From Zygnema circumcarinatum SAG 698-1b (taxonomy: Eukaryota; Plantae; Zygnematophyceae), in NCBI GenBank assembly GCA_037447605.1, contig CM074813.1, forward strand, positions 310,001 to 374,000: DNA of 64,000 bases, in the 5' to 3' direction. Both the position numbers and the translations under genes were made by a program. The first letter of the stretch is position 1. Each line of letters starts with the position of its first letter. Below are positions 4,362-46,615 of the stretch, in pieces. The notes below the pieces were generated by a model, which saw only the letters and a list, made by a program, of their open reading frames with translations, ran no database searches and was not told where the DNA came from.

Positions 4362-4576
4362 GTTGGCGAAAGAGGAGACAAGAAAAATATGGCTCCTTTC
4401 TACTTATTACTTTCTTCAAGTTACGACTGCAACGAGAGGAAGGAAAAAGTAATGTGTGTAAGAAAGTGGATGCATTTGCATATTTTTTTTTTTCGGGATT
4501 TTCAAAGTCACAAAAAGTTGCCCAACATACGAAAGGCAGTGAGTACAGTATGAACCAGGTGGTAATCTCTACTTCT

Positions 4577-4693
<117 letters not shown>

Positions 4694-7775: not shown

Positions 7776-7837
<62 letters not shown>

Positions 7838-17486: not shown

Positions 17487-21594
<4,108 letters not shown>

Positions 21595-23348: not shown

Positions 23349-24472
23349 TTAGTTCTTGATGTAGTTTCCGTACTTGATGCCCTGATCCCTGTACTTCTGG
23401 GGAAGAGGGTCAAAGTAGAACTTGCCAGCCAATCCTTGGACGGACGACCCCATGGTGTAGATGATCCACGTCTTCACAATGTAGCTAACAGATGCGCTTC
23501 CGTACGAAATGCGGCAGAATTCGAACGGGAGAGCGGCAATGGGGTAGGTGGAGGGGCCGGGCCTGTTGAGGAGGGAGAGGCCGGCGAACACGGTGCTGGC
23601 GTAGTCCGGAGGAGTGGTCGGGAGCGACGCGGAGAGGTCCGCTCCGCTCGCCGCATAAATGTAGTTCCCTGCGGGGTTCTTGATGCCGGCGGCCGGGACG
23701 GCCTCGACGGTGCAGATGCCGGTCTGGACGTACCCGATCCGGTTCACGTCCGCCTTGAGCGCCGCGATGATGCCCGCCGACCCCGAGGCGTACACGATGA
23801 ACGGAGAGACGCCGGCGATGCCCTTCCACGTGTTGGTGCCGGTGGCTGCGGTGGGCCACGCGGTGTTCTGCGTCTTGATCCACTTCCCGATCACTTCGGT
23901 CGACCCGGAGGAGTCGGACCGCGCCACAGGCGTCACTTGGCCGTAGAGGCCGGTCTTGATGGTGGACCAGTACACGCGCGTCTTTGCTACGTAAATTTTG
24001 TAAACCTGGGCGCCGGTGAGTTTCACAGAGGCCTTCTTCGTGCAAAACGAGTAGGTCGCGATGGAGAAGGGGATGGTGAACTTCTTCGTGCCTCCCGCGG
24101 CGGCGTCCTGTGAGGAGGGGATGGCGACGTCGGAGTACGCCACCTGGTAGGTCTTGCTGATGAAGTTCGAGATTCCCGCGCCGGAACCCACGGACTTGTA
24201 CGTGCCATAGTTGGCGCGGTTGGGGGCGTTGAGAATGGCTTGGGCGACGTACTGCCAGAGAGAAACAGCCTGTGTGAGCTGCATGAAAGACTCAAAGCTG
24301 AAACACTTTCCAACAACAGACTGCGACGCATTCAGAAGGACAGCAGGGAGGGAGGTCGGGTCGTTACCGGCGCCACGGAGGTGGCTCCGCCAATCACAAT
24401 CGCCGACTGCGCGGCACCGGCTGAGAGAAGGACGAGAGCGGCGATGAGAGCGGCGATGAGAGCGGCGGCCAT
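23349..24472 (-). CDS. pstS: secreted PstS/DING-superfamily phosphate-binding protein, copy 1 (exons 24472-24368 and 24251-23349; 335 aa)
   Basis: Signal peptide MAAALIAALIAALVLLSAGAAQSA, then IVIGGATSVAP|YVAQ..YKSVGSGAG..AYSD..VARSDSSGSTE..ASGSAGIIAAL..RIGYV..KNPAGNY..TYPI..FDPLP. The phase-0 GT-AG intron is in frame (exon lengths 105 and 903 nt). Confidence 0.9.
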
Positions 24473-24620
24473 GGCTGGGGAGCCGGGAGGGAGAAGGGGA
24501 TCACTTGGAAGAGTGGGGCGGGAGGAGAAGTAGGCTGTCGGCTGTGAGGGAGGACGCGCGGGCTTATTTTATAGTCTGCGCTGCGCCAGTGCCGCGTACT
24601 TCGCCCGCGGGTCGTGCTGA

Positions 24621-24630
24621 GCCACGTGGC
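24621..24630. promoter_or_regulatory. palindromic G-box GCCACGTGGC upstream of the TATA box of PstS copy 1 (same motif at 29576-29585 for copy 2)
   Basis: Perfect palindrome about 150 bp upstream of the ATG in both copies; TATAAA lies between it and the ATG on the minus strand. Confidence 0.5.
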
Positions 24631-25221
24631 AGCCTGGTATTGGTTAGTGAATGTGACGTCAGCAGGCAGTTTGCAAGTGGCTCTCAATACCGTACCAACT
24701 CATCGCAACGGATAGCGTGTCTCCATGAGAGAACGGAGCCCGAATTGAAAATTGGTGCAGACGTGGCCATTCGCCATTAGCTGATGTTCGATTGTTTCTC
24801 GCAACTGAGCGTAGCCAGACCGCTTTCCGATGTGCAATCTTGATTTGCTCGCTACGAATTACTTCGGTTTGAAACTGTTCTGCGTCAGAATGCGTAGCGA
24901 GCAAATTCGGATTCCATTCCAGGAAGCCAAAGTCTTCCCAAAACCCCTCCCGGTGTATGAGCCAATCCGATTGTGCGACGTCAGTAGTGTACCAAATCGT
25001 TGAAAGATTGGCTTTGTCCTGGATTCGAGCATTCTACGATGAAGTTTCCGCCTATTTGTCGTCTTTTTAACGGATGTGCCACGCGTCGCCATCCGGTTGG
25101 CGGAAGGACATTGTGACGTGGTTGCGCACTACCCGGCCAGCATCCGGCACGTGGCGACTCGTTGGAGGATTGGCGCCGTATGGGTGGCCTTACTAATACG
25201 ACAAGAAAAGGAGTCCCCAGC

Positions 25222-25229
25222 GAATATTC
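25222..25229. promoter_or_regulatory. P1BS-type motif GAATATTC (GNATATNC) in PstS spacer 1
   Basis: Lies in the block GAATATTCCAAGATGCTGTC, which is identical in all three spacers. Confidence 0.5.
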
Positions 25230-25439
25230 CAAGATGCTGTCGGCGCAACATAACGACAAAACAGAGTCCGACGTGGTGAACAATGCGAAAGTAGGGCTTG
25301 GAGGGAACGCAGAAATTAGAAATGAGTCGTTTTTGGGAGAGGCGAGGTTTGGACTGCGGCATTGTAAAATTACACAAACATTGAACGTAGTTCGGCGAAT
25401 TTAAAAATTGAAAAAAAAAGAAAACAATTCCTTAGAATA

Positions 25440-25596
25440 GGGGGTGTCAGACTTAAAAAATTTCAGTACGCGTGTTCGTAAGTTTGACATCAGAACGAGT
25501 ACTCCAGTATAATCGCGATCCTCCTGCGGCGGAGTACTTTCGTAACCTTTTTTTTCGTAACGCTTTTCGTAAGATTTTGTTAAGTCTGACACCCCC
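25440..25596. mobile_element. Tc1/mariner-type MITE, 17-bp perfect TIR, TA target-site duplication
   Basis: TA|GGGGGTGTCAGACTTAA ... TTAAGTCTGACACCCCC|TA; absent from the paralogous spacer position near 30385. Confidence 0.85.
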
Positions 25597-26243
25597 TAAT
25601 GGGCCGAATGAAAGTCACATATGGAACTTGCACACAGCCGGAAGGATTAATTTTTTTACTTGAAACTCCTGAAAAAGTTGTAAAAGCAAAACAGTAAATT
25701 CCAATGCCAGGATTACGCCAGAAAGTAAATCTCGAAACCAAGACGTCCACCGACGAATTGTATTCCTGTAATAGAAACTGGAAGTACTAATTTTAAAACG
25801 TAAACCTAAAAAAATGCTTCGCACGAGTGTCCACCACAAAGGTCAACAAGTTTCAACGTTACCTTTCCCAAAGCCCAACAAACTCTTTTGTCGTCTTTCG
25901 CCCCGACAAAAGTCCCCCGCAGGTCCCACATGACGCTTCTAAAGAAGCCAAACCGCGAGTGCGACAAGGGACCAACGACGGTTCACCGCCCGCAAGGGTT
26001 TTGTCGTAAGAGTAGGAACGCATCTTCCGGAGATGCGATTCCGGCAATTAGCGGCATCTCACCGACAATTTATGCCACGTCGGCGGCGGCTTGTCGGCGG
26101 GGACGGCGGCGCCGCCAGGCGGCAAGCAGCCTGTGAAGGGGCCAGTGTGCCCTCAAGACTGGCAGCCGCCAGCCTACGCCTCCTCTCATCCTCTCGCCTC
26201 TCTCTCTCTCTCTCAGCCCCTTCTCCTCCCCCGCACTCCAGCC

Positions 26244-26275
26244 ATGGCCGCAGTTCTCGTATCCGCTCTCGTCCT
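26244..26275 (+). pseudogene. 5' relic of a PstS-like gene (promoter plus MAAVLVSALVL), head-to-head with copy 1
   Basis: CTCCAGCC-ATG GCC GCA GTT CTC GTA TCC GCT CTC GTC CT and the upstream 26040-26243 match the promoter and 5' end of copy 3; homology then stops. Confidence 0.7.
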
Positions 26276-26337
26276 ACACTTAGTGGGGGGGGGTCACACA
26301 TTGACCATCGCCGTACTAAATTCCAGAATTTAGTATA

Positions 26338-26811
26338 CAGTACCCCCCTAAATGTTTTCGCCATGGTTTCGGCAAATATTGGGCGAAAATCTTGGAATTT
26401 GAAAATATAAGGAAGTCCGTGTTAAAAATAGGCAGGCGGTCTTATGTTAGAGTCCCGCCTTCGGCCGTACTGTTTCTCTCTGTACAGAGGCGCATGGCTG
26501 CCTGGGGCCTGTCGCGAGCTCCTATTGGTGCCGAAAATTTAACTACACGAGCTCCTATTGGTGCCAAACATATACCGCACCATTCGGAGATCTTCTGCGT
26601 ACTATCCAAACAGCGGAATAGCGTGACCCATGTTTGAAATTCATTTCGATTAACAGATTTTTTATTGAAAAATAAGTCAGGTTAGGTTAACACCCCTGAT
26701 ACATAAACACAGACTTCCCGTACTAAAAGTGGTTTCCTCAAAGTCAGGGCGAATTTCTTGGGTAACGAAACTCGGGTACTCGGGTGGAAAATATTATAAG
26801 GGGGGGTACTG
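26338..26811. mobile_element. non-autonomous Tc1/mariner (CAGT-terminal) element with TA TSD
   Basis: TA|CAGTACCCCCCT ... AGGGGGGGTACTG|TA. Confidence 0.75.
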
Positions 26812-28313
26812 TACCAAGGATTGAATGTACGCGTAAATGGATGTATTCAACGGAAGTCGTCTCCGTCCGCCTACACTGCGTGACACGTGTCCCGATGAGA
26901 TCTGAGATCTTCCCAGACACATCAGCAAACTGTGTCGTTTGCTGTGGCGTCCTGACTGACCGGCGAACCATGCACATGCTAATTTCGCTGTCACTGGTAA
27001 ATTTCTCCATAGAAACGAGAAATTAATTGGCTCTCGAACTGCGTTGAAAATCAGTCAAATCCGTGAAATCAGGACCGCACCCAATCTGGATCGATTCCAA
27101 AATCTGAAATTCGATTCTGATTGGACGGCCAGGATGCGCCACGTCAGCGAGTCATCGCCCAATCCACCGTTTCTTGGCCCTGGCGGGACCGACGGCGCAG
27201 AACTGCGTCGGTTACGGTCCGTCCGACCGACGGGCACGTCGGTCGCCTGGGCAGCGATCGTACACTGAACGGACGGACGAGATTCATTCAAATTTCAAAA
27301 ATTGGTCGACGTTAGTCCGCGTGTGAGAGCTTGCGAGCACACTGAGGACCGCTAATCGCACCGATCAATGTTGTTGCCTAGCAGTGGTTTTTCATGTCCA
27401 CCTGCTGCCGTCCATAAGAGATGGCACGCATCTTTGCTACCATGTCAACTCTCGTCCTCTGCTTCAGATGTTAATTCTTCTACTTGTAAAAAGTGCATAG
27501 TCAGAGAATGGGTTTGTCGGATTTGTTTGTGATCATGGATGCTCCGCTAGGCTCCTGATATCAGCTATCGTATTCAACCGTTGGCACACATGCCAACAGT
27601 TGAGGGGAAGTGGAGGGCCGGCTACTTCCACCATGCTAAGACGACGTCCATTCTTTCACACAAGGCGGGCTGCGGTGCAGCGCGCCCGCAAGGTGAATGG
27701 CGAGAGGAAGACGGCCAGTGGACGCCGCCGGGGGGCTCTCGCCAAGCACTTCAAAATAAAGCTCAAATGCCATTGTTGAAAAATAAACGATTGAGCAGGC
27801 TGGTAAAGTGCTGCAATCACCTTACAATCACTTAGCTATTGAATATATTGTAAGAAAAGCAGTCATTAACTTCCAAGGGACTGTCAATACACCTCCAAAG
27901 TGTACAAGTCATTTCAGAGTGACTCCCCGATTCAAATGACACGTGTATGAAGATAAACTTGACAAAGAATATTCGTGGAAGTAAATGCAGAGAAAACCTG
28001 CCTTCCAGTTTCAATTTCAATTGATGACCAGCTTCTCATCCTCCAGTTGAGGGGAGTAAGGACGCATTGACAAGAGCAGACACAGTCAAGACACACGACC
28101 TTATCATATCAAAACTCCAATCAGGTAAATGAGCATGTCTCGATCCATTTATTTACGTCTACAATTACATCAAAACTGCGGAAAAAAACGCCGCTATAGC
28201 GTATCTTTTTCTCCAGAAAAATCACGACCCCACCCCTCCCCTAACCTACTACCTCCCTGCCCATTCTGCAAAATTGGTAGTTCCATACGCTGCCCTACAT
28301 AACAGAGTGAAAC

Positions 28314-29427
28314 CTAGTTCTTGATGTAGTTTCCGTACTTGATGCCCTGATCCCTGTACTTCTGGGGAAGAGGGTCAAAGTAGAACTTGCCAGCCAATCC
28401 TTGGACGGACGACCCCATGGTGTAGATGATCCACGTCTTCACAATGTAGCTAACAGATGCGCTTCCGTACGAAATGCGGCAGAATTCGAACGGGAGAGCG
28501 GCAATGGGGTAGGTGGAGGGGCCGGGCCTGTTGAGGAGGGAGAGGCCGGCGAACACGGTGCTGGCGTAGTCCGGAGGAGTGGTCGGGAGCGACGCGGAGA
28601 GGTCCGCTCCGCTCGCCGCATAAATGTAGTTCCCTGCGGGGTTCTTGATGCCGGCGGCCGGGACGGCCTCGACGGTGCAGATGCCGGTCTGGACGTACCC
28701 GATCCGGTTCACGTCCGCCTTGAGCGCCGCGATGATGCCCGCCGACCCCGAGGCGTACACGATGAACGGAGAGACGCCGGCGATGCCCTTCCACGTGTTG
28801 GTGCCGGTGGCTGCGGTGGGCCACGCGGTGTTCTGCGTCTTGATCCACTTCCCGATCACTTCGGTCGACCCGGAGGAGTCGGACCGCGCCACAGGCGTCA
28901 CTTGGCCGTAGAGGCCGGTCTTGATGGTGGACCAGTACACGCGCGTCTTTGCTACGTAAATTTTGTAAACCTGGGCGCCGGTGAGTTTCACAGAGGCCTT
29001 CTTCGTGCAAAACGAGTAGGTCGCGATGGAGAAGGGGATGGTGAACTTCTTCGTGCCTCCCGCGGCGGCGTCCTGTGAGGAGGGGATGGCGACGTCGGAG
29101 TACGCCACCTGGTAGGTCTTGCTGATGAAGTTCGAGATTCCCGCGCCGGAACCCACGGACTTGTACGTGCCATAGTTGGCGCGGTTGGGGGCGTTGAGAA
29201 TGGCTTGGGCGACGTACTGCCAGAGAGACACAGAGCCTGTGTGAGCTGCATGAAAGACTCAAAGCTGAAACACTTTCCAACAACAGACTGCGACGTATTC
29301 AGAAGGACAGCAGGGAGGGAGGTCGGGTCGTTACCGGCGCCACGGAGGTGGCTCCGCCAATCACAATCGCCGCCTGCGCTGCACCCGCTGAGAGAAGGAC
29401 GAGAGCGGCGATGAGAGCGGCGGCCAT
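28314..29427 (-). CDS. pstS: secreted PstS/DING-superfamily phosphate-binding protein, copy 2 (exons 29427-29335 and 29216-28314; 331 aa)
   Basis: The exon 2 protein is identical to copy 1, the intron position is the same, and the signal peptide is MAAALIAALVLLSAGAAQAA. Confidence 0.9.
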
Positions 29428-30180
29428 GACTAGAGAGCTATGGGTGAGAAGGGAAGAGCTTTGAGGTGTGGGGCAGGAGGAGAAGGAGGCTGGTGGCTGT
29501 GAATGTGATGGCGCGCGGGCTCCTTTATAGTCTGCCGGCGCCAGTGCCGCGTACTTTGCCCGCGGGTCCTTCTGAGCCACGTGGCAACCTGTTATTGGCT
29601 TGGGAAAATGACGTCAGCATATAGTTTGCAAGTGGCTCGCAATGCCGTACGAACTCATCGGAACGGGTAGCGTGTCTCCATGCGAGAACGGAGCCCAAAT
29701 CGGAGACGTGGCCAATCGCCATTAGCTGATGGTTGATTGTTGTATCGCAAATGAGAGTAGCCAGACCGCTTTCGATGTGCAATCTTGATTTGCTCGCTAC
29801 GGATTACTTCGGTTTGAAACTTTTCTGGGTGAGAATTCGTAGCGAGCAAATTCGAATTCCGTACCGAGCAGCCAAAGTCTGTCCACACCTCGAGCCAAAG
29901 TTTTTATCATTCGGTGTTTGAACCAATCCGATTGTGCCACGTCATTAATATCAAATCGTTGAAGGATTAGCTTTGTCCTGGATTCGAGCATCCTTCGATG
30001 AAGTTCCCTTCTGTTTGTCGGCCTGTTAACGGATGTGCCACGCGCTCACATCCGGTTGGCTGCGGGCCGTCGTGACGTGGTTGCGCACTACTCCGCCAGC
30101 AGCCGGCACGTGGCGGCTCGTTGGAGCATTGGCGCCGTAGGGATGGCCGTACTAATGAGACAAGGAAAGGAGTCCCCAGG

Positions 30181-30188
30181 GAATATTC
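30181..30188. promoter_or_regulatory. P1BS-type motif GAATATTC in PstS spacer 2
   Basis: Same conserved block as 25222. Confidence 0.5.
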
Positions 30189-31014
30189 CAAGATGCTGTC
30201 GGCGCCTAATAGCGACAAAACAGAGTCCGACGTGGCGAAAAGTGTGAAAGTAGGGCTTGGAGGGAACGAAGAAATTTGAAAAGCGTCGTTTGTGGGGGAG
30301 GCAAGGTTGGACTGCGGGATTTCTAAATTACACAAAAATTGATCGTCTTGAGATGAATAAAAAATCCTTAAAAAAAGAAAACAATTACCGAAAATTTGCC
30401 TCATGGAAGTCACATATGTTACTTGCAGTCAACCGGAAAGACTAAATTTTTTATTTGAAGCACAAAAGTTGAAAAAAGTTTTGTAGGCTAAACACCAAAT
30501 TTCAATGCCTGGTCAGGTCAGAAAGTAAAACTCGAAACTAGTACGTCCTCCGACGAATTAAGATTCCAAAAGGACAGAAAATAAGTACTGATTTCAAATC
30601 GAATACGTCGGAAATGGTCAAAGCTTTGCACGAGCGTCAACGTCACTTTTCCCGTCGCCCAACAAACTCGTTTGTCGTCTTTTACCACCAACAGAAGTCT
30701 TCCACAGGTCCCAAATGACGCATTCAAAGAGTCCAAACCACCAGTGCGACAATGGACCAACAACAGTCCTTAACCGCCTGCTGCGTTTTGTCGTAAGCGT
30801 AAGACCGCATCTTTATGAGATGCCATTCCTGCCAACCGCGGCATCTCACCGACAATCTGTGTCACGTAGGCGGCGGCTTGTCCGCGGGGACGGCGGCGCC
30901 GCCAGGCGGCGAGCAGCCTAGAAGGGGCCAGCGCGCCCTCAGGACTGGCAGTAGCCAGGCTCCGCCTCCTCTCCGTAGGGTCTTCCCCTTCTCCTCTTCC
31001 CCCGCTCTCCAGCC

Positions 31015-31053
31015 ATGGCCGCAGCTCTCGTAGCCGCTATCTTACTAGAATAA
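31015..31053 (+). pseudogene. 5' relic of a PstS-like gene (MAAALVAAILLE*), head-to-head with copy 2
   Basis: CTCTCCAGCC-ATG GCC GCA GCT CTC GTA GCC GCT and the upstream promoter match copy 3; the relic abuts the 3' flank of stalk gene B. Confidence 0.7.
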
Positions 31054-31271
31054 TTACTACATCAGGAATTAAGATTCATATAGCACACATGCAATGTCTA
31101 CACTTTAACAGTGCTATGGGCTAAACAAACTATAAAGTCCTGAAATCAAGATTCGAGGATCGTAACAACTATACTTATGTTACATCTGGGTCTCCACTTT
31201 CACGGCCACATTTAAATGTTCAAAAAATCACATGTAAATGATGAAGTTCCATATATATAGTATGCGGAGTC

Positions 31272-34200
31272 CTATTTCCTTTTCCTTGCGAAGCTGCCCT
31301 TCACAGACTCGCCGTTGAGGTTTTTGGCGCCCGACGATGCGAGCGCCGTCGCCTGCGCTGCCCCCACAACGCGCGCGCTGGCCCGAACGAATCGCGCGAC
31401 CTTGCAGTCGGCGCGGAGGAGGGCAGAGGCGCGGTACGCGGCGACGGGCCCGTCCAGGAACCCGATCGCGTCGTCGCCAGGCACCACCTCCGTACGGAGA
31501 AGGGCGTTATATTCGAGGGTTTGCTGAGCACTGCCACAAGACAAGCATCAAACCGGTGTTGGAGTTAGAAAGAACGGTATGGCGTTTGAACTCATCTAAA
31601 TAGTAAGATTCATGTTCTACGTAAAGCAAGCTCGAGTCGTGTCAGCCAGAAGGAAGCTGCAAACTCTTTAACAAACGAGGGGTGAATCAGAACTCACAGG
31701 CGGTCCCTGTGGTCTGAGCGGAAGGTCTGCCCGAGGATGCCATGAGCATTGTCGGACAAGTCCGCGACGGGAATCTCAAAGTTAATGTGCACCACTCCAT
31801 CCGTTTCTGTCCTCAAAAGCTCGATTTCCGGTCGCAGCGTGAGCCTCAGTTTGATCACTTCCCCGATTCTGATTTGGAACACATCGACCAAGTCATCGCC
31901 GCTTCGCATCTTCGCCGCGAGCCATCGCACTTCGATGTCTCCATTTGCGCGCGCGGCGGAGTCTCCCGCCTGTCCGAGCAGCACCTCTTCGCCGTCGATG
32001 GCAATGTGGCCAAGGTACCCACTGTCATACTGCCACCTGGCACCATCCCGTGCCGCGAAAACGACGGTGTGGTGCCCCCAAAGGATGGCGAGCCGTCGGA
32101 TCCATGTAAGGGCTTTGTGGGGGTTGCTGCCCCACTGTCCGTACCGACCTCCGTAATACATGTTGATGTGAAGGTGCGCATCGCTGATCAGGCAGAATGA
32201 TGCATTGGGTTCGCCTGTGCACAAGTCCAGCAAATGCAAAAGGTAAGGACCAGTCTTTCTCCCTTACTAGAACTAGGTAAGCAGTGTGAATTTCAAGCCT
32301 ATGTTTCTGCCAATATCTGGCAAAGCTGGCTTAACAATGTTGTCCTACCCGAGAAGTCAAACCGGGACCCATCAGCACCAGTGAAGTGAGGGTCTCCAAC
32401 GCCGCCTGGAACAAGCGGAGGGGGTGGAGCAGTGGTGGTAGGGGGGGAGGAAGTTTCTCCGGAAGAAACAGGCGGGGGGGGAGAAGGGGTTGGGTCGGCA
32501 ACGACTGGCGGAGGAGGGGAGGCGGTCGGAGTGGTGGGAGGTGGAGGGGGAGAAGGGGTTGGGTCGGCAACGACTGGTGGAGGAGGCGAGGGGGTCGGAT
32601 TGGTGGATGGTGGAGGGGGAGAAGGGGTTGGGTCGGCAACGACTGGCGGAGGAGGTGAGGCGGTCGGAGTGGTGGATGGTGGAGGGGGGGAAGGGGTTGG
32701 GTCGGCAACGACTGGCGGAGGAGGGGAGGGGGTCGGAGTGGTGGATGGTGGAGGGGGGGAAGAGACTGGTACGGAAACGACTGGCGGAGGAGGGGAGGAT
32801 GTCGGAGGAGGTGGAGGAGAAGGGCAAGTTCCAGCAGCGACCGTGAGAGCGTTGCATACTTTGTTGCCTATGCTGATGTCAGCAGTGTTTGACCCCAAGT
32901 TTGCGAGCACTACGGTGCTGGTGAATCCGTTCCCCTGCAGAGCCAAAGTGCCCACAAGTTGGGTCAAGACGAGAGTGCAACGTCCAGAGAATATGCTATT
33001 GATGTGGAGGGGCTTTCGGGGGCGAGAGGTGGGAGGGAGTTTAGGAACGTGAATGAAGACTGGGGAAAGGAAGGGAAAGAGAGAGAGAAAGTTAGGAGAA
33101 AGAAAGGCACAAAAAATGGTAGTTGGAAAGAGAGTGGCGGGGGTGGGAAAGGAAGGAAACAAGTCCGATGGTGGGAGGAATGGCATCAAGAGCGAGACTG
33201 GGGGGTGAGGAGAGTGATGTAACAAGTGGGTGGGAAATCGACAGCGGAGGGTGGAGGGTTGGCGAGGAAAACGTTGAGCCAGGTAAAAACTAAAAACAAA
33301 AGCAGAGGGGAAAAGAGAGCCTTGACATGGGGAGAGCACGAACCAGTATTCCTCCAGCATTGCACTGCCCGTTGTTCATGATGCTAACGGAACAGGTCGG
33401 GCTGGCCACATTCACAAAGCATCCGTCCACTTGCGCATTCGAGAGGAGGCCAAACAGCGGATTTCCGCCTATAAAAAGGGTGTTTAGAAACTTGGTGTTC
33501 GCTGAGACCAGAGCCGACGTCCCGGTTGCGCCAGTCAGGGTGACCTGCAGGCAGAGGGCATTCGTACACTTATTTTAACCAGATTTCCTCGCGAATAAAC
33601 GAGTGAGCCATCAAGATATTCAAGTTACATCAGCAACAGTAATAAAGCTCAAAGCATGTGCTAAACATGGTTATGAGTTGTGCTGCCCCTCACTCCAAAG
33701 CCTCCAGTGGAACTTGTAGTTCCGCTGCCCCACACGTATGTGTATGTCGAGACTCCAAGTGTGGTGGTTCTGAGCGTGCAGTTGATGGAGATCTGAAGCA
33801 CCAAAATCGATGGCACACATCACCCATTGGACGAATATATTTGAGAGGTGAACCGGCGTATTGAGCTGTTTATAGACTTGGAAATTTTCCAAACTCATTA
33901 TAAAAGCTTTAATGCGCCCTACAGTTCATTCTTCAAAAAATGAAGGTGCGATACAAGTGACTCATAGGAGGTTCGGTCGGAGTCGAGGCTAAAGCAAACG
34001 GGAAAGAGAAAATGGCAGAGCGTGGAGGGGGAAACAATAATTAGGGCAGCGAAATGAAAGAAGAGGAGGAGAGGGCGAGTACCGAGCTCGAGGTCGTGAA
34101 CTCGTCCGTGCCGACTGTGAAGGTCCCGTCGAGGCACCTGTCACAGTACGCGCTCCCCAAAATCGCACTGCCGCTCTGCTTCCCACCAGACCCACTTTGT

Positions 34201-34375
34201 CACTACATGCGATCTGCCAAAAAAGTTCAGAAAAAAATCAAAAGAAATGCACTGTGCTTTTATTTTTTGTTTCCGCATGCGCTAGAATAATTCGCAGCCG
34301 TACCACGGTGGGGAACAGCAAGTTCAACAGAGCTGCGCACAGCGCAGCCACTACTGCTCCTCTGTTCGAAGCCAT
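31272..34375 (-). CDS. secreted Ole e 1 + Ser-Pro4 stalk (~143 aa) + GDPH root-cap domain protein (copy B)
   Basis: MASNRGAVVAALCAALLNLLFPTV; GSAYCDRCLDG; stalk with four STTPTPSPPPPVVADPTPSPPPP-type units; GDPHFTGADGSRFDFSG/EPNASFCLISDAHLHIN..HGILGQTFRSD/..ADCKVARF. Confidence 0.88.
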
Positions 34376-35079
34376 GGCGCCCCTTTCTGTGTCTCCTGCA
34401 CTATCCTCCCTCTCCCTCTAACTCCTCTCCCTCTTCCTCTCCCTCTCCCGCACGGCGAAGTCCTCAAGCACAGGCTGCCAACACCCAAGCTCCGCTCCGA
34501 CTTCGAGCGCCGCCGCCGCCCTCTAAATCGTCCCCCGCCGACCGTACGGTAGCTGTCGCGCGCCTCCTCGTAACTGTCGCCGCGCGGCCGCCGGCCCACA
34601 GCTACAGCCGCGGCCTCTGTACGAACGGCAACTGTAAGGACGAACTGACGGCGGTTCCGTCGCCGTACGGCGTGGGCCGCGTGGCAGTCATTGGACGGAG
34701 CGCACCGATGCGACGACTTTACCGTACAGGCGACAAGACATGCCTTGTACAGTAAGGCGGAAACGACAACGATGAAGCTGAGGTGGTTCCGGGGATTTCT
34801 TTATCTATACTTTGTCGTTTATTGGTGAACGTTTTAGAAAGGATGGTCTGGTCTATGTATATTTTGTCGTTTATTGGGACAAGTAGTAGAGGCGGTGGTT
34901 GGGTATGTTGTATTTTGTCGTTATTCGCTGGTTTGACGAGCTGACGCGACTGACGTTTCTAGGGTTCGTGTGGGGACGTCATATTGTGGATGGCAAAGTT
35001 GGCGTTTTGAGGGATTGACCGTACGATCTTCATTGGAAGTTGTCTCCTTCCGCCAGCGCTGCATGTAACGTGTCCTGAA

Positions 35080-35454
35080 TAGGGATGGCCCGCGTTATAA
35101 AGTCCGACTATATTATATACTTTACAACGGGTTTAAAAGTAGTAATATAGTACAAAGTAAAACACTTTATTACATATATTATACCCACTCGTTTTGAACA
35201 ATTAACGACCGTACGACCGTACGAATACGGTCGTACGGTCGTACCATACCAAAATTAGGTCGTTTTGGCGTTGGCGTTGCGAAATGCGTCCGTCTGGTTC
35301 ACTCTGTCTTCACCGCATAATACCGTACAGTCGTACGACCGTACGCCCGTACATGTTGTAAAGGCGTTGTAAAGTATTATATAACAGCCGTTATTTAGTC
35401 GTCACAGTTATATAATATAATAGAGATTATATAGTCGTAATTAAGCCATCCCTT
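35080..35454. mobile_element. non-autonomous hAT (Ac/Ds-like) element
   Basis: TAGGGATGGC ... GCCATCCCTT ends with an 8-bp TSD GTCCTGAA (35072-35079 and 35455-35462). It carries internal CGACCGTACG subterminal repeats. Empty sites occur in the paralogous flanks near 26890 and 42350. Confidence 0.85.
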
Positions 35455-36900
35455 GTCCTGAATGAGATCTGAGACCCTCCCCAGCACGTCAGCAAACTGT
35501 GTATTGCGCTGTAACACCGGATTGAACGGCCGACCATGCACATGCACATTTCTCTTTAACTCGTAAACTTCTCTTTAGAAATATCTCAGTTGGGCCACGA
35601 CCGGCGTTGAAAATCTTCCCGATCCATGAAATCAGGACCGCACCGAATCTGTATATACTCAAAAATCTCAAATTTGATTCTGATTGGACGGCGTGAATGC
35701 TCCACGTCAGCACGCCATCGGCCAATCCGCCGTTTGTTGGCTCTGGCTGGACAGACGGCGCCAAACTGCGCCGGTTACGGGCCGTCCGACCGACGGGCAC
35801 GTCGGTCGCTTGGGCAGCGATCGTACGGACAACGGACGGACGGACGAGATTCATTCAAATTCCAAAGACTGGTCGACGTCCGTCCGCGTGGGAGAGCTTG
35901 GGGGCACAGTCGAGGACTGCTAATCGCACATACAATGTTGTTGCCTAGTCCTGGTATTTCATGTCCTCTTGTTGCCGTCCACAACCTAGATTGTGTGGAT
36001 TGCACACACCTCTGCTACCATGATATGATATGGTGCCTACCGTGCTTCAGATGTTAATTATTCTACTTGAAAAAAGTACATAGTCAGAGCATGGGTTTCT
36101 CGGATTTGTTTGTGATCATGGATGCCCCGCCAGGCTTCGCATATCAGCTCTAGGACTCAACCGTTGGCATATGTGCCAACGGTTTAGGGGAAGTGGAGGG
36201 CGGTCTGCTTCCACCATGTTAAGACGGCGGCCATTCTTCACACAAGAGCAGCGCGCGCAAGGTGAATTGCGAGAGAAGGACGGCCACAGCACAGCGCCGG
36301 GGCGCTCTCGCCAAGCACTTCAGAATAAATTCAAATGCCATTGTTGAAAAACAAACGATTGAGCAGGCTGGTCGAGTGATCGCATTACTTAGCCATCACT
36401 TCGCCGTTCAATATATGGTGAGAAATGCAGTCATTAAATTCGAAGGGACTCTTCATAACAACTTCCAGAGTTCCATATATTGACATTTCAGAGTGACTCC
36501 CTGATTTGCATGACAGGTGTATGAAAATATCCTTGAAAATGAATAATTGTGGGAGTAAATGCAAACAAAACCAGCCATTCAGCTTTAGTTTCAATTGAGG
36601 ACCAGCTTCTCATCCTCCAGTTCACAAAAGCAAGCTGGAAAAGGAGTACATTGCATTGATTAGAGCAGACACATTCAAGCCACACGACCATATCATAATC
36701 AAAACTCCAATCAGGTAAATGGGCATTGTATCGATCCTTTATTTTACGTCTACAATTACATCAAAACTGAGGGAAAAAATGCTGCTAAAGCGTGTCGTTT
36801 TTTCCGGAAAACTCACAACCCCACCCCTCCCCCAACCTACCTCCCGCCCACTCTGCAAAATTGGTAGTTACATACGCTGCTCTACATGACAGAGTGAAAC

Positions 36901-37122
36901 TTAGTTCTTGATGTAGTTTCCGTACTTGATGCCCTGATCCCTGTACTTCTGGGGAAGAGGATCAAAGTAGAAGTTGCCAGCCAATCCCTGGACGGACGAC
37001 CCCATGGCGTAGATGATCCACGTCTTCACAATGTAGCTGACAGATGCGCTTCAGTACGAAATGCGGCAGAATTCGAGCGGGAGAGCAGCAATGGGGTAGG
37101 TGGAGGGGCGGGGCCTGTTGAG
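36901..37122 (-). pseudogene. PstS copy 4 pseudogene, 3' fragment (~73 codons)
   Basis: Matches the PstS C-terminus but has GGA>TGA (ISY*), several missense changes and is cut by an LTR. Its promoter survives at ~38065-38260. Confidence 0.88.
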
Positions 37123-38062
37123 TGTTAGTGTACATAGTTAGTTCAGATTAGCATGTTTGTGTTGGCGCTTAGTTCCTAGGGGTGTGCTTCTAGGTGTGAG
37201 ATGTATGGGGGCGGACTTACTTCATGGTTGACTCAAGAGCGTGCGCGCGGAGGCGAGACCGACCAAGCTGCCGGTAGAGACTGTACGGACAGTACGGACA
37301 GTACGGACAGTCGACAGTGCGGACAGTACGGCCAGGAGTTCGACATTCAGTACCGCTCCGAGGACTCGGTCCTGGAGTACGGAATCGAGGAATGATGCGG
37401 CGCCGGAAGACGGCGGAGTCGGTGGAGGCGGCGGAGCGTACTTTGGGTACGGAAGTTAGTCCTTGTGGGTGACGGCGGGAAGTTCAGCTCGGCGGTAGAG
37501 TACATGGCCATTTGGGTTAGAGCGGTGGTGTTGGTACGTTNNNNNNNNNNTGGGTGTACTATGCATAGCAAGACACGAAGTAGTTTATTTAGGTTGTTTG
37601 AATAAGGTTGTTGCATGCATGGTCCCGGCGCGTGTGACGTGACATGGTCACGTCACAGCCCCATACTATATAGTGAGAGTGGGTGTGTAAGTTAGTAACC
37701 TTCTTGATATGCATTGCAAGGCTATGGCAGTTTGAGGGCATGGCTTTGGCAAGAGGAGGTGGACCTTTGTGAGGAGTCTCCGTGTGTGGAGAGCTGCCTC
37801 ACGTGAAGGTGAAGTGATCATGTGGTGAAAGCTTGACTAGGCTTATGGGGGCTTGAGTTGGAAAGCTTGTCATCATAAAAGGAGTTTTAGGCTGGGAGCT
37901 TTCTCCTACGTTTTTCTATTCCGCCTCTTGTGTGTTGTGTGTGCACTTGAGTGAAAAATGAGTGAGAGTGTTGCGGGCACCAGGAGGGAAGTTTCCATGG
38001 ATAGTGAAGAGGGGGAAAGGGTTGGAGACGAATTTGCATCTCATCCCTCTGCCCCTCTCACA
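37123..38062. mobile_element. LTR element (solo LTR or collapsed element spanning the N gap at 37541-37550)
   Basis: Begins TGTTAG, ends CTCACA, and is flanked by a 5-bp TSD TTGAG (37118-37122 and 38063-38067). TATA-like and AATAAA-like motifs lie inside. Confidence 0.8.
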
Positions 38063-38554
38063 TTGAGGAGAGCAGGGAGGGAGATGGGGAAAGCTTTGAA
38101 GAGTGGGGCAGGAGGAAGAGGAGACTGGCGGCTGCCACGTCGAAGGGACGACGGCCTCTTTATAGGCTTCTCGCCGCCACGCGGGGGCGCCGTCCCTGCC
38201 GAGAAAAGACCTCCTATGTGGCTAAACTGTCGGATAGATGCCGCCTATGGACGGAATGAGTTACCGATCAACAATGAGATTTTAGAGGATCGCAACGCGC
38301 GTGGACCCGGAGGCTCGTACAGAGTTTGTTGATCGGGTCGCCGGAGAGTTGTACTGCAAAACTGAGCCCGGGTGAACCGGATCCCTCGAATCGCATGGAA
38401 CTAACGTGGCAAATACTGGAATCCTCTCGTGCGACCGAGATGTCTCCATGTGACAATTATACCGAAATCCAGTATTTGTGGCGTATCACCATCGACGATG
38501 ATCGATAGATATTTCGCATTGGAGAAGAGTTTTGAGACTTGGCTTCCCGTCATG

Positions 38555-38636
38555 GCAATCTGAATTTGCTTGCTACGAAGTCTTGCTGTTTGACACTGTG
38601 CTAGTTCAGAATTCGTAGCAAGCAAATTCAGATTGC
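38555..38636. repeat. 25-bp perfect inverted repeat (hairpin) in PstS spacer 3; homologs at 24843-24906 and 29788-29851
   Basis: GCAATCTGAATTTGCTTGCTACGAA ... TTCGTAGCAAGCAAATTCAGATTGC. Confidence 0.85.
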
Positions 38637-38956
38637 ATTTCCGGGAAGCCAAAGAGTAGCCCCTCCGCCCACAGATTTAAAAAACTTGAGATTACATTTA
38701 CTGGGCCAATCGAAATTATGCCACGTAAGCATAATCCAAAAGCGTGCTGAGATTTGTCATATCTTGGATTTGGGGGCCACACGATTGATTCTCCACTTTT
38801 TTGTCGACATGTGCGTATACGGCACGCGTCACCGCCCGGTTGGCCGCAATGCTTCCGCGCGCTACTGTATTACGCCGGCCCGCACATGGCGAACCAGTCC
38901 GTACATAAAGACCGTACGAGCGGCCATGGGCATACGGCACGGGCAGCTTTCCAAGG

Positions 38957-38964
38957 GAATATTC
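38957..38964. promoter_or_regulatory. P1BS-type motif GAATATTC in PstS spacer 3
   Basis: Same conserved block as 25222 and 30181. Confidence 0.5.
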
Positions 38965-39779
38965 CAAGATGCTGTCAGCGCAGCATCCCGACAAAACCTC
39001 CCGTAAGTCCGAAGTGGTTGAGACAAAAAGTAGACCAGTGAAATTTGAACACACGCACATGGTTTTCGTACAGTTCAGACGTCCGGCCGTACATTCAAAC
39101 AGCTCTTCGGCCATTCTGAAAGTGTTTTATAATACGGCCAGACTTTTAAAACTTTTGATTGGAATTCTAGTTCCCGACACTGCGTTAAAGTAAACATCCC
39201 TCCCTAATCGTGACGCACATCTCGAAACTAGTACCTTATCACTCGAAAATCAAGAAACGCAAAGGCCAAATGGAAGTACTCCTTCGAGACCGACCTCGTC
39301 AGAGAACGTCAAAGCCTTCACCCGCTCGAAGGATCCACAATGTCGACATTTTCTAACGTCCCCTTCTACATGGTTGCCGCGAACCTTCCCAACTCAATTG
39401 TCAACTCAACTCAACTCAACTCAACAAACTCAGTTGTCGTATAACACATCGACAAAAGTCCCCGCAAGTCCCAACTATCGCATTCAACGAAGCCAAACCG
39501 CACGTGCGACAAGAGACCCACAACCGTTGGCCCCCGTCGGCTGCGTTTGTCGTATTCGTAAGACCGCATCTTTCGGCGATGCCATTCCGTCCATCGGCGG
39601 CATCTAACCGACGGTTTATGCCACGTAGGAGGCCTCTTGTCGGCAAAGACGGCGGCGCAGCGTGGCGGCGAGAAGCCTATAAAGAGGCCTCCGTCCCTTC
39701 GAAGTGGCAGCCGCCAGCGTTCTTCTCCTCCTGGCTCTCTCTTCCAATCTTTCCTCATCTCCCTCCCTGCTCTCCAGCC

Positions 39780-40894
39780 ATGGCCGCCGCTCTCATCGCC
39801 GCTCTAGTCCTTCTCTCAGCGGGTGCCGCGCAGGCGGCGATTGTGATTGGCGGAGCCACCTCCGTGGCGCCGGTAACCACCTGACTCTCCCTCCCTGCAG
39901 TGCTCCTGAATGCGTCTCACTCTGTTGTTGGAAAGTGTGTCAGTTTTGCATCTCCCATGCAGCTAAGACAGGCTCTGTGTCCCTCTGGCAGTACGTCGCC
40001 CAAGCCATTCTGAACGCCCCCAACCGCGCCAACTATGGCACGTACAAGTCCGTGGGTTCCGGCGCGGGAATCTCGAACTTCATCAGCAAGACCTACCAGG
40101 TGGCGTACTCCGACGTCGCCATCCCCTCCTCACAGGACGCCGCCGCGGGAGGCACGAAGAAGTTCACCATCCCCTTCTCCATCGCGACCTACTCGTGGTG
40201 CACGAAGAAGGCTTCTGTGAAACTCACCGGGGCGCAGATCTACGCCCTCCACGTGGCGAAGACGCGAGTGAACTGGTCCGCTCTCAAGGCTGGCCTCACG
40301 GGCCAAGTGACTCCCGTGGCGCGGTCCGACTCCTCCGGGTCGACCGAAGTGGTCGGGAAGTGGATCAAGACGCAGAACACCGCGTGGCCCACCGCCGCCA
40401 CCGGCACCAACACGTGGAAGGGCATCGCCGGCGTCTCTCCGTTCATCGTGTACGCCTCGGGGTCGGCGGGCATCATCGCGGCGCTCAAGGCGGACGTGAA
40501 CCGGATCGGGTACGTCCAGACCGGCATCTGCACCGTCGAGGCCGTCCCGGCCGCCGGCATCAAGAACCCCGCAGGGAACTACATTTATGCGGCGAGCGGA
40601 GCGGACCTCTCCGCGTCGCTCCCGACCACTCCTCCGGACTACGCCAGCACCGTGTTCGCCGGCCTCTCCCTCCTCAACAGGCCCGGCCCCTCCACGTACC
40701 CCATTGCCGCTCTCCCGTTCGAATTCTGCCGCATTTCGTACGGAAGCGCATCTGTCAGCTACATTGTGAAGACGTGGATCATCTACACCATGGGGTCTTC
40801 CGTCCAAGGATTGGCTGGCAAGTTCTACTTTGATCCTCTTCCCCAGAAGTACAGGGATCAGGGAATCAAGTACGGAAACTACATCAAGAACTAA
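39780..40894 (+). CDS. pstS: secreted PstS/DING-superfamily phosphate-binding protein, copy 3 (exons 39780-39872 and 39992-40894; 331 aa)
   Basis: Same exon/intron structure as copies 1 and 2, TATAAA at 39678, and 11 amino-acid differences confined to one segment of exon 2. Confidence 0.9.
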
Positions 40895-45849: not shown

Positions 45850-46615
45850 GACTCTGTTCTGAAAATATGGGGCTTCAACATTCACAAGTGGGCTTGAAAG
45901 TGGGGATTCAGATGTAACATAACTATTGCTGCTATCATCTTCAAATCTTGTTTACAGGGTTTTATAGTTTTACCAGCCCGTAACATTGTTAGCGTGTAGG
46001 CATTGCATGTGTTCTATATGGCTCTGAATGCCTTACGCATTACATTAAGTTTTATTTCTATGATTGTTGTATTCGAGGCCTGAAATCCGTATTTTAAACA
46101 AAGAATTCCTGATTTTTTGTCCTTCAAAAAATGTTTATTTATGTCCTGTTTTCACATTTTGGAAATGAGTGGCTGCAGTGCTCAGTAGAAGAATGTTAGT
46201 TGTGCTCTCATTTAGGTGGGCTCGCAATAAAAGCATCCCTTAAAATTTATATATACAATATAGCGGACTCAGAGAACCCCATTTCTTCAAGGTCAGTTTC
46301 CAATAGGATGTGAGTTGGAAAAACACATTGGAAAATAAGGTTATCTGAAATGCAAGTAACGGCAACTTCATATAACGACAATCCATCAAGCATCTAAAAA
46401 TTTGACTTTGGTGCTATTAGACATTCAGTCATGAGAACTCACGCTTATGATTATGCTTTGAAGAAAAGATTTTTGAGAATGATGATGTGGGACTGCAAGA
46501 GTTGAACTGTATCTTGTATTCTTTATTGAATATGGGGATTTTACATCTTTCAAAGAGAACAGAGCGGTACTTTCTTGATTTTGGATCCAACCGTTTGGCT
46601 GACCAAGGCCAAAGT

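What the first reader, a model, noticed from the sequence alone, without database searches (positions are those of the whole stretch)
23349..40894. Intron-containing, secreted PstS/DING-superfamily phosphate-binding gene family in a plant-lineage nuclear genome
Seen: three intact copies (23349-24472 minus, 28314-29427 minus, 39780-40894 plus). Each has a hydrophobic signal peptide and a phase-0 GT-AG intron splitting the GATSVAP|Y motif, and all lie on the same scaffold as RNC1, THO7 and RPT2. Knowledge: the E. coli PstS phosphate ligands T10, S38, D56, R135, D137, S139, G140 and T141 align by eye to GAT, VGSG, YSD and RSDSSGS, so the binding site looks intact. The compact W..IKTGLYGQVTPVARSDSSGSTE and ASGSAGIIAAL segments resemble DING proteins more than the longer loop of ABC-linked PstS. 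DING-type proteins have been reported from plants and animals, while their genes are known mainly from bacteria. No pstA/B/C partner is in the window. Inference: a horizontally acquired and domesticated extracellular phosphate scavenger that has been amplified locally.
Basis: partly seen in the sequence, partly recalled or inferred. Interest (0 to 1): 0.92.

Follow-up and report, generated by a model that had tools for sequence, protein, structure and literature searches.

The report
Secreted algal PstS phosphate-binding gene cluster
A streptophyte (plant-lineage) nuclear genome carries a small cluster of intron-containing genes for a secreted, bacterial-type PstS phosphate-binding protein; it belongs to an old, barely studied algal gene family and is neither a recent bacterial import nor a DING protein.

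Summary
There are three intact two-exon genes (335, 331 and 331 aa). Each has a TATA box, an N-terminal signal peptide and a phase-0 GT-AG intron three codons after GGATS. There are also one 3' pseudogene fragment and three promoter relics. The N-gap is intergenic and touches no copy.

The protein is a canonical PstS. It passes Pfam PBP_like_2, the AlphaFold model has pLDDT 94.7, and the best fold matches are Xanthomonas and cyanophage PstS. All E. coli phosphate ligands are conserved apart from T141S.

The DING affinity is not supported: DING structures score clearly lower by profile and by fold, and there is no DINGGG N-terminus.

Recent horizontal acquisition is not supported either. The genes fall in a well-supported clade with Mesotaenium, Spirogloea and Closterium proteins. 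Two distant members have the intron at the same position. The clade sits beside multi-domain PstS of Mesostigma, Tetraselmis and Paulinella, apart from all sampled prokaryotic PstS. The ultimate donor is unresolved, and a cyanobacterial-type origin is not rejected (AU p 0.28).

Nuclear algal PstS genes are already on record: Chlamydomonas PSTS, which is induced by PSR1 over-expression, and diatom PstS with a signal peptide.

The likely role, inferred only, is extracellular phosphate capture under phosphate limitation. The cluster is homogenised by gene conversion.

The parts
23349..24472 (-). PstS-like gene copy 1 (335 aa): exon 1 24472-24368, intron 24367-24252, exon 2 24251-23349 including the stop
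   Evidence: The signal peptide carries a 12-nt (IAAL) duplication relative to c2/c3.
24567..24573 (-). TATAAAA box 101 nt upstream of the c1 ATG
   Evidence: Read directly. Equivalent boxes are present at c2 and c3.
28314..29427 (-). PstS-like gene copy 2 (331 aa): exon 1 29427-29335, intron 29334-29217, exon 2 29216-28314
   Evidence: Exon 2 is 902/903 nt identical to c1.
29524..29529 (-). TATAAA box 102 nt upstream of the c2 ATG
39780..40894 (+). PstS-like gene copy 3 (331 aa): exon 1 39780-39872, intron 39873-39991, exon 2 39992-40894
   Evidence: It differs from c1 at 35 nt and 11 aa in exon 2; 27 of the 35 nt differences lie at exon 2 nt 206-324.
39678..39683 (+). TATAAA box 102 nt upstream of the c3 ATG
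36901..37122 (-). 3' pseudogene fragment (last ~73 codons) with an in-frame TGA at 37053-37051
   Evidence: 93% aa identity to c3 residues 259-331
37541..37550 (.). Assembly gap, intergenic, about 420 nt beyond the end of the fragment's homology
26034..26275 (+). Solo promoter/5'UTR/start-of-exon-1 relic (75% identical to the c3 5' region), divergent from c1
30821..31038 (+). Solo promoter/5'UTR relic (74% identical), divergent from c2
38067..38258 (-). Solo promoter/5'UTR relic (86% identical to the c3 5' region)
25222..25229 (.). P1BS-like palindrome GAATATTC, 750 nt upstream of the c1 ATG
   Evidence: Suggestive only.
30181..30188 (.). P1BS-like GAATATTC, 754 nt upstream of the c2 ATG
38957..38964 (.). 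P1BS-like GAATATTC, 816 nt upstream of the c3 ATG. The surrounding block is in the opposite orientation relative to the gene.

Best explanation
This is a cluster of three expressed-looking nuclear genes, plus decayed relics, in a streptophyte genome. The host is most likely a zygnematophycean alga or a lineage near it.

Each gene encodes a single-domain PstS-type phosphate-binding protein of about 310 aa after signal-peptide removal. It carries a eukaryotic ER signal peptide and no membrane anchor or retention signal.

Shown: the gene structure, the PstS fold, the conserved phosphate ligands, membership of an algal PstS clade with a conserved intron, and maintenance of the local copies by gene conversion.

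Inferred: the protein is secreted into the cell-wall or periplasm-like space. There it binds orthophosphate with high affinity under phosphate limitation. It raises the local supply for the alga's own H+/Na+-coupled phosphate transporters, or it is taken up again, since no PstCAB importer exists. In effect it is a PstS working without its ABC partner.

The prokaryotic origin of the family is ancient. It predates the divergence of the Zygnematophyceae and possibly goes deeper into green algae. It is not an event of this genome.
For: Gene models, phase-0 GT-AG intron, TATA boxes at -101/-102.

Sequence family: Pfam PBP_like_2 43.3 bits against a cut-off of 27. TIGR00975 matches nearly its full length.

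Fold: AlphaFold2 pLDDT 94.7, pTM 0.92. Foldseek top hits are Xanthomonas PstS 8ods and cyanophage PstS 7xg8/7xg7, with TM 0.76-0.83 and E about 1e-20.

Ligands: T31, S58, D76, R146, D148, S150, G151, S152.

Topology: only the N-terminus is hydrophobic.

Eukaryotic setting: THOC7, IF-2B, a proteasome ATPase and Root_cap genes on the same N-free contigs. GC3 is 0.84, against 0.81-0.84 for THOC7 and RPT2. THOC7 is 66-70% identical to Sphagnum, Mesotaenium and fern orthologues.

Family: an exhaustive search finds 35-39% identical proteins. Named ones are Mesotaenium, Closterium and Spirogloea. The clade has support 98 in FastTree and in IQ-TREE LG+C20. The algal versus prokaryotic split has support 93-96.

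Intron: the same position in L001 and in L007/L008, the latter next to a Ty1/copia gene.

Gene conversion: c1-c2 are 97-99.9% identical across exon 1, intron and exon 2, but 72-78% in the immediate flanks. The c1-c3 differences cluster in a 120-nt patch.

Function: Chlamydomonas PSTS (Cre01.g044300) rises up to 7.9-fold when PSR1 is over-expressed (PMC10413257). One P1BS-like GAATATTC lies 750-820 nt upstream of each copy.
Against: No expression, secretion or binding data exist for these genes.

The TIGR00975 score (80 bits) is far below the equivalog cut-off (205 bits). By NCBI's criterion this is not a functional equivalent of bacterial PstS.

T141 is Ser, and F11 is Ser.

No partner is known, so the hand-over step is speculative.

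The P1BS sites lie in a repeated block, so they are not independent, and the window-wide excess is weak (14 against 7.1 expected; 3 of 100 shuffles reach 14).

I did not place Chlamydomonas PSTS in my tree, so transferring its regulation to this family is by analogy only.

The structure model lacks exon 1 (first strand, T31/S32).

The host species was not identified.
Confidence: 0.72

Rival explanations
1. Recent horizontal transfer from a bacterium into this particular genome, followed by domestication.
For: PstS is a typically prokaryotic family. The nearest prokaryotic hits are only 28-31% identical. No eukaryotic ABC partner is present.
Against: The closest relatives are eukaryotic: Mesotaenium, Spirogloea, Closterium and transcript-like contigs, at E 1e-45 to 1e-19. 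The clade has support 98. The intron position is shared with homologues only about 32-33% identical. Codon usage matches the host.
Confidence: 0.04
2. Endosymbiotic gene transfer: the algal PstS clade descends from the cyanobacterial plastid ancestor's pstS/sphX, not from a later HGT.
For: The best solved-structure relatives are cyanophage, that is picocyanobacterial-type, PstS. Forcing the algal sequences together with the cyanophage-type cluster costs only 16 lnL units and is not rejected (AU p 0.277). PstS-domain proteins occur in both Chlorophyta (Tetraselmis; Chlamydomonas PSTS in PMC10413257) and Streptophyta (Mesostigma, Zygnematophyceae).
Against: In the free ML trees the cyanophage-type cluster is nested among other prokaryotes and is not sister to the algal clade. 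Cyanobacterial diversity was barely sampled. The proteins carry ER-type signal peptides, not plastid transit peptides. Paulinella and diatom PstS also need explaining.
Confidence: 0.25
3. A true eukaryotic DING protein gene, the long-sought gene behind plant and animal DING proteins.
For: It has a GGAT N-terminal motif and a PstS-superfamily fold, and it is secreted with no ABC partner, as DING proteins are (PMC2817009 and PMC2225411 for background).
Against: The profile scores DING at 75-78 bits, against 109-142 bits for canonical PstS. Foldseek ranks DING 21st or lower, with TM normalised to the target of 0.59-0.65. The mature N-terminus is AIVIGGATS, not DINGGG. The mature protein has about 310 aa, against about 370-380 for DING chains.
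Confidence: 0.02
4. Neofunctionalised binding protein: the PstS fold is kept, but the protein binds another oxyanion or a phosphorylated wall component, or acts as a sensor or structural cell-wall protein rather than in phosphate nutrition.
For: It scores far below the PstS equivalog cut-off. F11 is Ser and T141 is Ser. Some paralogues in the family have lost the D56 equivalent (Mesotaenium P0129, P0132, P0138), which shows the family does explore other specificities. The genes are co-duplicated with extensin-like Root_cap wall-protein genes.
Against: In the window copies every side-chain ligand of E. coli PstS is identical or conservatively replaced. That includes D76, the D56 equivalent, which established work on E. 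coli PstS links to phosphate-over-sulfate discrimination.
Confidence: 0.15
5. Bacterial contamination or chimeric assembly.
For: The scaffold has four 10-N gaps, one of them between c2 and c3.
Against: The genes have spliceosomal introns, TATA boxes and eukaryotic signal peptides. Each copy is on an N-free stretch with bona fide eukaryotic genes. Repeats and relics of the gene are interleaved with host-type genes.
Confidence: 0.01

Closest known systems
Bacterial PstS, the periplasmic phosphate-binding subunit of the PstSCAB ABC importer (E. coli PstS, PDB 1IXH/2ABH; Xanthomonas PstS 8ODS)
   Same: Same type II periplasmic-binding fold (TM about 0.7-0.8). Same length class. Same phosphate ligands: T10, S38, D56, R135, D137, S139 and G140 identical, T141 replaced by Ser. 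The signal peptide is cleaved just before the first strand (GGATS corresponds to GAGATF).
   Different: Only 18-31% identical. Below the TIGR00975 equivalog cut-off. Nuclear gene with a spliceosomal intron and a TATA promoter. No pstCAB or phoU. F11 is Ser. Must work without an ABC permease.
Cyanophage and picocyanobacterial PstS (PDB 7XG7 Syn19, 7XG8 P-SSM2)
   Same: Best sequence and structure matches among solved structures (142 bits; TM 0.79-0.83). Compact loops.
   Different: About 22-26% identity. These are viral or bacterial genes that feed the host's Pst transporter. A specific relationship is neither supported nor rejected (AU p 0.28).
Nuclear PstS homologues of other algae: Chlamydomonas PSTS Cre01.g044300 (PMC10413257), diatom PstS with a signal peptide (PMC3237598), and multi-domain proteins of Tetraselmis (UniRef A0A061RD09), Mesostigma and Paulinella micropora
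   Same: Eukaryotic, nuclear PstS domains without a Pst permease. They fall on the same side of the algal versus prokaryotic split (support 93-96). The Chlamydomonas gene is induced when the phosphate-starvation regulator PSR1 is over-expressed.
   Different: The Tetraselmis, Mesostigma and Paulinella proteins have two to four tandem PstS domains (700-1750 aa) and are about 25% identical. The window family is single-domain and soluble.
Zygnematophycean single-domain PstS-like proteins (Mesotaenium ME000013S00800/00797 and ME000026S04527/04530; Spirogloea SM000365S13725/13721 and SM000056S17993; Closterium CAI5530945.1 and CAI7732424.1)
   Same: Same architecture (signal peptide, GGATS, about 330 aa). 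Same clade (support 98). Also found in tandem or paired copies. An intron at the same codon boundary was shown in two environmental members of the clade.
   Different: Only 30-39% identical to the window proteins, which sit on a long branch of their own. These proteins exist only as automatic annotations. I found no paper that describes them.
DING proteins (PfluDING 2Q9T/4F1U, HPBP 2V3Q)
   Same: PstS superfamily, high-affinity phosphate site, and not encoded next to an ABC transporter.
   Different: Lower profile and fold scores than canonical PstS. No DINGGG N-terminus. About 60-70 residues shorter, lacking the DING-specific insertions.

Membership tests
PstS / PBP_like_2 phosphate-binding proteins | Significant match to Pfam PF12849 above the gathering score | tested here: met
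   43.3 bits (c1, c2) and 38.6 bits (c3) against a cut-off of 27
PstS / PBP_like_2 phosphate-binding proteins | Two-lobe type II periplasmic-binding fold most similar to solved PstS structures | tested here: met
   AF2 pLDDT 94.7. The top 20 Foldseek hits are all PstS or PhoX, with E 1e-17 to 1e-20. The model covers exon 2 only.
PstS / PBP_like_2 phosphate-binding proteins | Conserved phosphate ligands (E. coli T10, S38, D56, R135, S139, G140, T141, plus the D137 salt bridge) | tested here: met
   T31, S58, D76, R146, S150, G151, S152 (Thr to Ser) and D148
PstS / PBP_like_2 phosphate-binding proteins | NCBIfam equivalog TIGR00975 score above the trusted cut-off (functional equivalence to ABC-linked PstS) | tested here: not met
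   77-80 bits against a cut-off of 205
PstS / PBP_like_2 phosphate-binding proteins | Encoded with, or working with, PstC/PstA/PstB | tested here: not met
   tblastn of E. coli PstC, PstA, PstB and PhoU against the window gives only E > 1 noise. The rest of the genome could not be searched.
PstS / PBP_like_2 phosphate-binding proteins | High-affinity, selective orthophosphate binding | not testable with these tools
   Needs purified protein
DING proteins | Mature N-terminus DINGGG(ATL) | tested here: not met
   The predicted mature N-terminus is AIVIGGATSVAP
DING proteins | Closer in sequence and structure to DING than to canonical PstS | tested here: not met
   Profile: DING 75-78 bits against PstS 104-142 bits. 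Foldseek: DING ranks 21-28.
Algal (zygnematophyte-type) secreted single-domain PstS clade | Monophyly with the Mesotaenium, Spirogloea and Closterium sequences, to the exclusion of prokaryotic PstS | tested here: met
   Support 98 in FastTree (229 rows) and in IQ-TREE LG+C20 (87 rows)
Algal (zygnematophyte-type) secreted single-domain PstS clade | ER signal peptide directly followed by the (F/I/L/W)GGA(T/S)S strand; about 325-345 aa; no anchor | tested here: met
   Alignments; hydropathy. No dedicated signal-peptide predictor was available.
Algal (zygnematophyte-type) secreted single-domain PstS clade | Phase-0 intron three codons after GGATS | tested here: met
   Window c1-c3, L001, L007/L008. 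Not resolved in L011/L012. L010 carries an uninterrupted full-length ORF on a metagenome scaffold, so the intron may be absent from a basal subclade.
Algal (zygnematophyte-type) secreted single-domain PstS clade | Induction by phosphate starvation (PHR1/PSR1 regulon) | tested here: inconclusive
   One P1BS-like GAATATTC lies 750-820 nt upstream of each copy, but in a repeated block, and the window-wide excess is weak. The Chlamydomonas PSTS data are from another subfamily.

The most novel reading that the evidence does not exclude
[quoted passage not shown] A secreted bacterial-type binding protein concentrates orthophosphate in the wall space and either passes it to eukaryotic H+/Na+ symporters or is internalised. 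This would be a mode of eukaryotic phosphate acquisition not yet described. It would have been kept and amplified in subaerial or freshwater streptophyte algae and apparently lost in land plants.
Probability: 0.3. Interest if true: 0.75.

Novelty: new member of a known kind. Interest (0 to 1): 0.48.

Why it matters
Phosphate is often the limiting nutrient in the freshwater and subaerial habitats of streptophyte algae. How the algal relatives of land plants scavenge it is part of the terrestrialisation question.

A secreted PstS without its transporter raises a concrete, testable mechanistic question: how is the bound phosphate handed to a eukaryotic carrier?

The family gives a clean case of a prokaryotic binding protein integrated long ago into eukaryotic gene structure, with a conserved intron, an ER signal, and multi-domain and single-domain forms.

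The result also removes a tempting but wrong link to the DING-protein puzzle.

Practically, these are compact and probably very tight phosphate binders from eukaryotes. They could serve as biosensor scaffolds or as phosphate-stress markers for zygnematophytes.

Tried and rejected
(1) The word-indexed search with exon 2 returned only prokaryotic PstS at 28-31% identity and missed the eukaryotic family. The exhaustive representative search was needed.

(2) The profile search in the indexed collection saturated at 8000 candidates. It returned one family member plus bacterial PstS, so it gave no taxonomic survey.

(3) The search for related loci on genome contigs with alignment A1 failed because no stretch was conserved enough. 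Named prokaryotic references were taken from plasmid and phage records and from E. coli K-12 instead.

(4) An exact look-up of the 311-aa read-through ORF found nothing. The host genome is not in the gene-position collection and the species stays unidentified. THOC7 places it only as a streptophyte, 66-70% identical to mosses, Mesotaenium and ferns.

It was re-run without them. The full spliced protein could not be submitted by reference, so the model lacks exon 1.

(6) The intron-position test on L011/L012 (P0133, P0146) showed no recognisable exon 1.

(7) Source look-ups of further unlabelled clade members gave only anonymous environmental or transcript contigs. Absence from land plants is therefore inferred only from the lack of any embryophyte label among the 30 clusters looked up. 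It is not proven.

(8) Literature searches pairing PstS with Zygnematophyceae, with streptophytes or with individual genera found no description of the family. Searches did find Chlamydomonas PSTS and diatom PstS.

(9) DING kinship was considered and rejected.

Full report
**Observation.**
Reading their 5' ends and building the models in a script gives three two-exon genes.

- c1, minus strand: exon 1 24472-24368, intron 24367-24252, exon 2 24251-23349, 335 aa.
- c2, minus strand: exon 1 29427-29335, intron 29334-29217, exon 2 29216-28314, 331 aa.
- c3, plus strand: exon 1 39780-39872, intron 39873-39991, exon 2 39992-40894, 331 aa.

Each intron starts GTAAC and ends CTGGCAG. Each is phase 0 and splits GGATSVAP|YVAQ. 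Introns of 116-119 nt cannot be read through in frame. A TATAAA box lies 101-102 nt upstream of each ATG.

The only strongly hydrophobic stretch is the N-terminal MAAALIAAL..LLSAGAAQ(A/S). There is no second hydrophobic segment and no C-terminal anchor.

The spliced junction aligns without a gap to cDNA-derived homologues and to E. coli PstS (GAGATFPAP|VYAK). This is homology support for the splice model, given that no RNA data are available.

**The gap.**
The window has four 10-N gaps. The one at 37541-37550 is intergenic. The nearest PstS-like sequence is a 3' fragment at 37122-36901, which covers the last ~73 codons and has an in-frame TGA at 37053-37051. Its homology ends about 420 nt from the gap.

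c1 and c2 lie on an N-free stretch (6315-37540) with THOC7. c3 lies on an N-free stretch (37551-48939) with an IF-2B gene and a Root_cap gene. Linkage to host genes therefore does not depend on the gap. Only the c3-to-c1/c2 linkage does.

**What the protein is.**
Exon 2 of each copy matches Pfam PBP_like_2 above the gathering score. It also matches the PstS equivalog TIGR00975 over nearly its whole length, but at 77-80 bits against a cut-off of 205.

An AlphaFold2 model of exon 2, built with a 76-row alignment, is very confident (pLDDT 94.7, pTM 0.92). Its best PDB matches are Xanthomonas PstS and the cyanophage P-SSM2 and Syn19 PstS structures (TM 0.76-0.83), followed by mycobacterial and E. 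coli PstS.

I aligned the proteins with E. coli K-12 PstS taken from the annotated genome. Every phosphate ligand is conserved: T10, S38, D56, R135, D137, S139 and G140 are identical, T141 becomes Ser, and the backbone-donor position F11 is Ser.

No PstC, PstA, PstB or PhoU homologue is in the window.

**DING.**
A profile of the family scores canonical PstS at 104-142 bits and DING/HPBP at 75-78 bits. Foldseek ranks DING structures 21st and lower, with poorer coverage of the longer DING chains. The predicted mature N-terminus is AIVIGGATS, not DINGGG. The GGAT motif that prompted the idea is the general PstS first-strand motif.

**Relatives.**
The word-indexed search saw only prokaryotic PstS at 28-31% identity. 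The exhaustive search of 1.84 billion representatives found a closer set at 31-39% identity, with E down to 3e-45. These proteins share the architecture: signal peptide, GGA(T/S)S, about 330 aa.

Source names identify Mesotaenium endlicherianum (two tandem pairs), Closterium spp., Spirogloea muscicola (two pairs) and a EukProt transcriptome. The rest sit on transcript-length or short genomic environmental contigs.

More distant hits include multi-domain PstS proteins of Tetraselmis, Mesostigma and Paulinella micropora.

In a 229-row FastTree, the window copies fall in a 40-row clade with all the zygnematophyte sequences (support 98). The multi-domain algal proteins form its sister clade (support 96 for the union). 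Every labelled bacterial, archaeal and cyanophage PstS lies outside.

An 87-row IQ-TREE analysis with a site-heterogeneous model reproduces this: family clade 98, algal versus prokaryotic split 93.

The intron gives independent support for old eukaryotic residence. Two family members about 32-33% identical to the window protein have a phase-0 GT-AG intron at the same codon boundary, three codons after GGATS. One is genomic contig L001, and the other is L007/L008, which sits next to a Ty1/copia gag-integrase gene.

GC3 of the genes (0.84) equals that of the neighbouring THOC7 and proteasome ATPase exons.

The host's THOC7 is 66-70% identical to Sphagnum, Ceratodon, Mesotaenium, liverwort and fern orthologues, with no same-species hit. 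The host is therefore a streptophyte not represented in the protein collection. From the position of its PstS genes inside zygnematophyte diversity, it is probably a zygnematophyte or something close. This is inference.

**Origin.**
The family is of prokaryotic type, so a transfer happened at some point. It is not an event of this genome.

The donor is unresolved. Constraining the algal sequences to group with the cyanophage/picocyanobacterial-type cluster costs 16 log-likelihood units and is not rejected (AU p 0.277). Endosymbiotic transfer therefore remains a live alternative to ancient HGT. My sampling of cyanobacteria was thin.

**Local dynamics.**
The cluster consists of a direct repeat (c1 and c2, period 4965 bp) and a larger inverted duplication that also carries an extensin-like Root_cap gene.

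c1 and c2 are 97-99.9% identical across exon 1, intron and exon 2, but only 72-78% identical in the 150-300 nt on either side.

c1 and c3 differ at 35 exon 2 positions. Of these, 27 lie within nt 206-324, and the remaining ~780 nt are about 99% identical. Of the 8 differences outside the patch, 7 are synonymous.

This mosaic pattern indicates gene conversion acting on functional genes.

Three solo promoter/5'UTR relics (26034-26275, 30821-31038, 38067-38258) and the 3' fragment record further duplications that decayed.

**Function.**
Nothing here measures function. The inference of extracellular phosphate capture rests on four things:

- the intact site;
- the secretory architecture;
- the absence of a permease partner;
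- by analogy, Chlamydomonas PSTS (Cre01.g044300), a nuclear PstS homologue induced when the phosphate-starvation regulator PSR1 is over-expressed (PMC10413257).

Each copy has one perfect P1BS-like palindrome (GAATATTC) 750-820 nt upstream of its ATG. These sites sit in a repeated block whose orientation differs at c3, and the window-wide excess is modest. They are a hint, not evidence.

Some paralogues elsewhere in the family have lost the D56 equivalent, so not all members need bind phosphate.

**Novelty.**
Nuclear PstS genes in algae are already on record. Chlamydomonas PSTS appears in PMC10413257. A diatom 'Phosphate-binding protein PstS', of prokaryotic origin and with a signal peptide, appears in a table of PMC3237598. 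The zygnematophyte proteins exist as automatic annotations.

I found no paper that describes or characterises the streptophyte family.

The window therefore adds a new, divergent and locally amplified member to a known but unstudied kind. It is of moderate interest for phosphate nutrition in the algal relatives of land plants. It is not the extraordinary find that its initial score implied.

Noticed in passing
window 18497-21203 (+), 31694-33360 (-), 44337-45437 (+): Three genes combine long SPPPP/extensin-like repeats with a DPHFxGxDG Root_cap-type C-terminal domain (weak Pfam Root_cap hit). Two of them are co-duplicated with the PstS-like genes in the inverted segmental duplication.
   Followed up: partly
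window 26034-26275, 30821-31038, 38067-38258: Solo copies of the PstS-like promoter/5'UTR, 74-86% identical to the c3 5' region. One runs about 30 nt into an exon-1-like start, with no gene body behind it. They are relics of earlier duplications or rearrangements.
   Followed up: partly
window 24981-25283, 29967-30413, 38716-39114: A repeated block, read as ORFs containing ..ADSILEYSLG.., lies about 0.5-1 kb upstream of each intact copy and carries the P1BS-like GAATATTC. At c3 it is inverted relative to the gene, so it may be a mobile or independently duplicated element.
   Followed up: partly
window exon 2 nt 206-324 of c3 (about 40197-40315) versus c1/c2: A 120-nt patch holds 27 of the 35 c1-c3 differences and 10 of the 11 amino-acid changes (residues 69-103 of exon 2), just before the RSDSSGS ligand loop. 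It is either a conversion tract from an unseen paralogue or a locally diversifying surface.
   Followed up: partly
window, e.g. 4454-4912, 7502-8107, 17304-18173, 48228-48638: Very abundant (CT)n/(GA)n microsatellites, read as SLSLSL or ERERER in ORF lists, fill introns and intergenic DNA throughout the window.
   Followed up: no
P0129/P0273 (Mesotaenium), P0132, P0138: One subclade of the algal family has replaced the D56-equivalent ligand with Ile or Thr, and in part also S139/G140/T141. This suggests a changed ligand specificity.
   Followed up: no
P0148/P0480 (Mesostigma), P0141 (Tetraselmis), P0143 (Paulinella micropora): Algal proteins with two to four tandem PstS domains (700-1750 aa). 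The Tetraselmis protein has a hydrophobic C-terminal segment that looks like a membrane anchor. They form the sister group of the secreted single-domain family.
   Followed up: partly
L010 (ENA metagenome scaffold, P0153): A member of the basal subclade (with Spirogloea P0140) has a full-length uninterrupted ORF on a metagenome scaffold. The conserved intron may therefore be absent from that subclade.
   Followed up: no
RNC1 was not verified.
   Followed up: no
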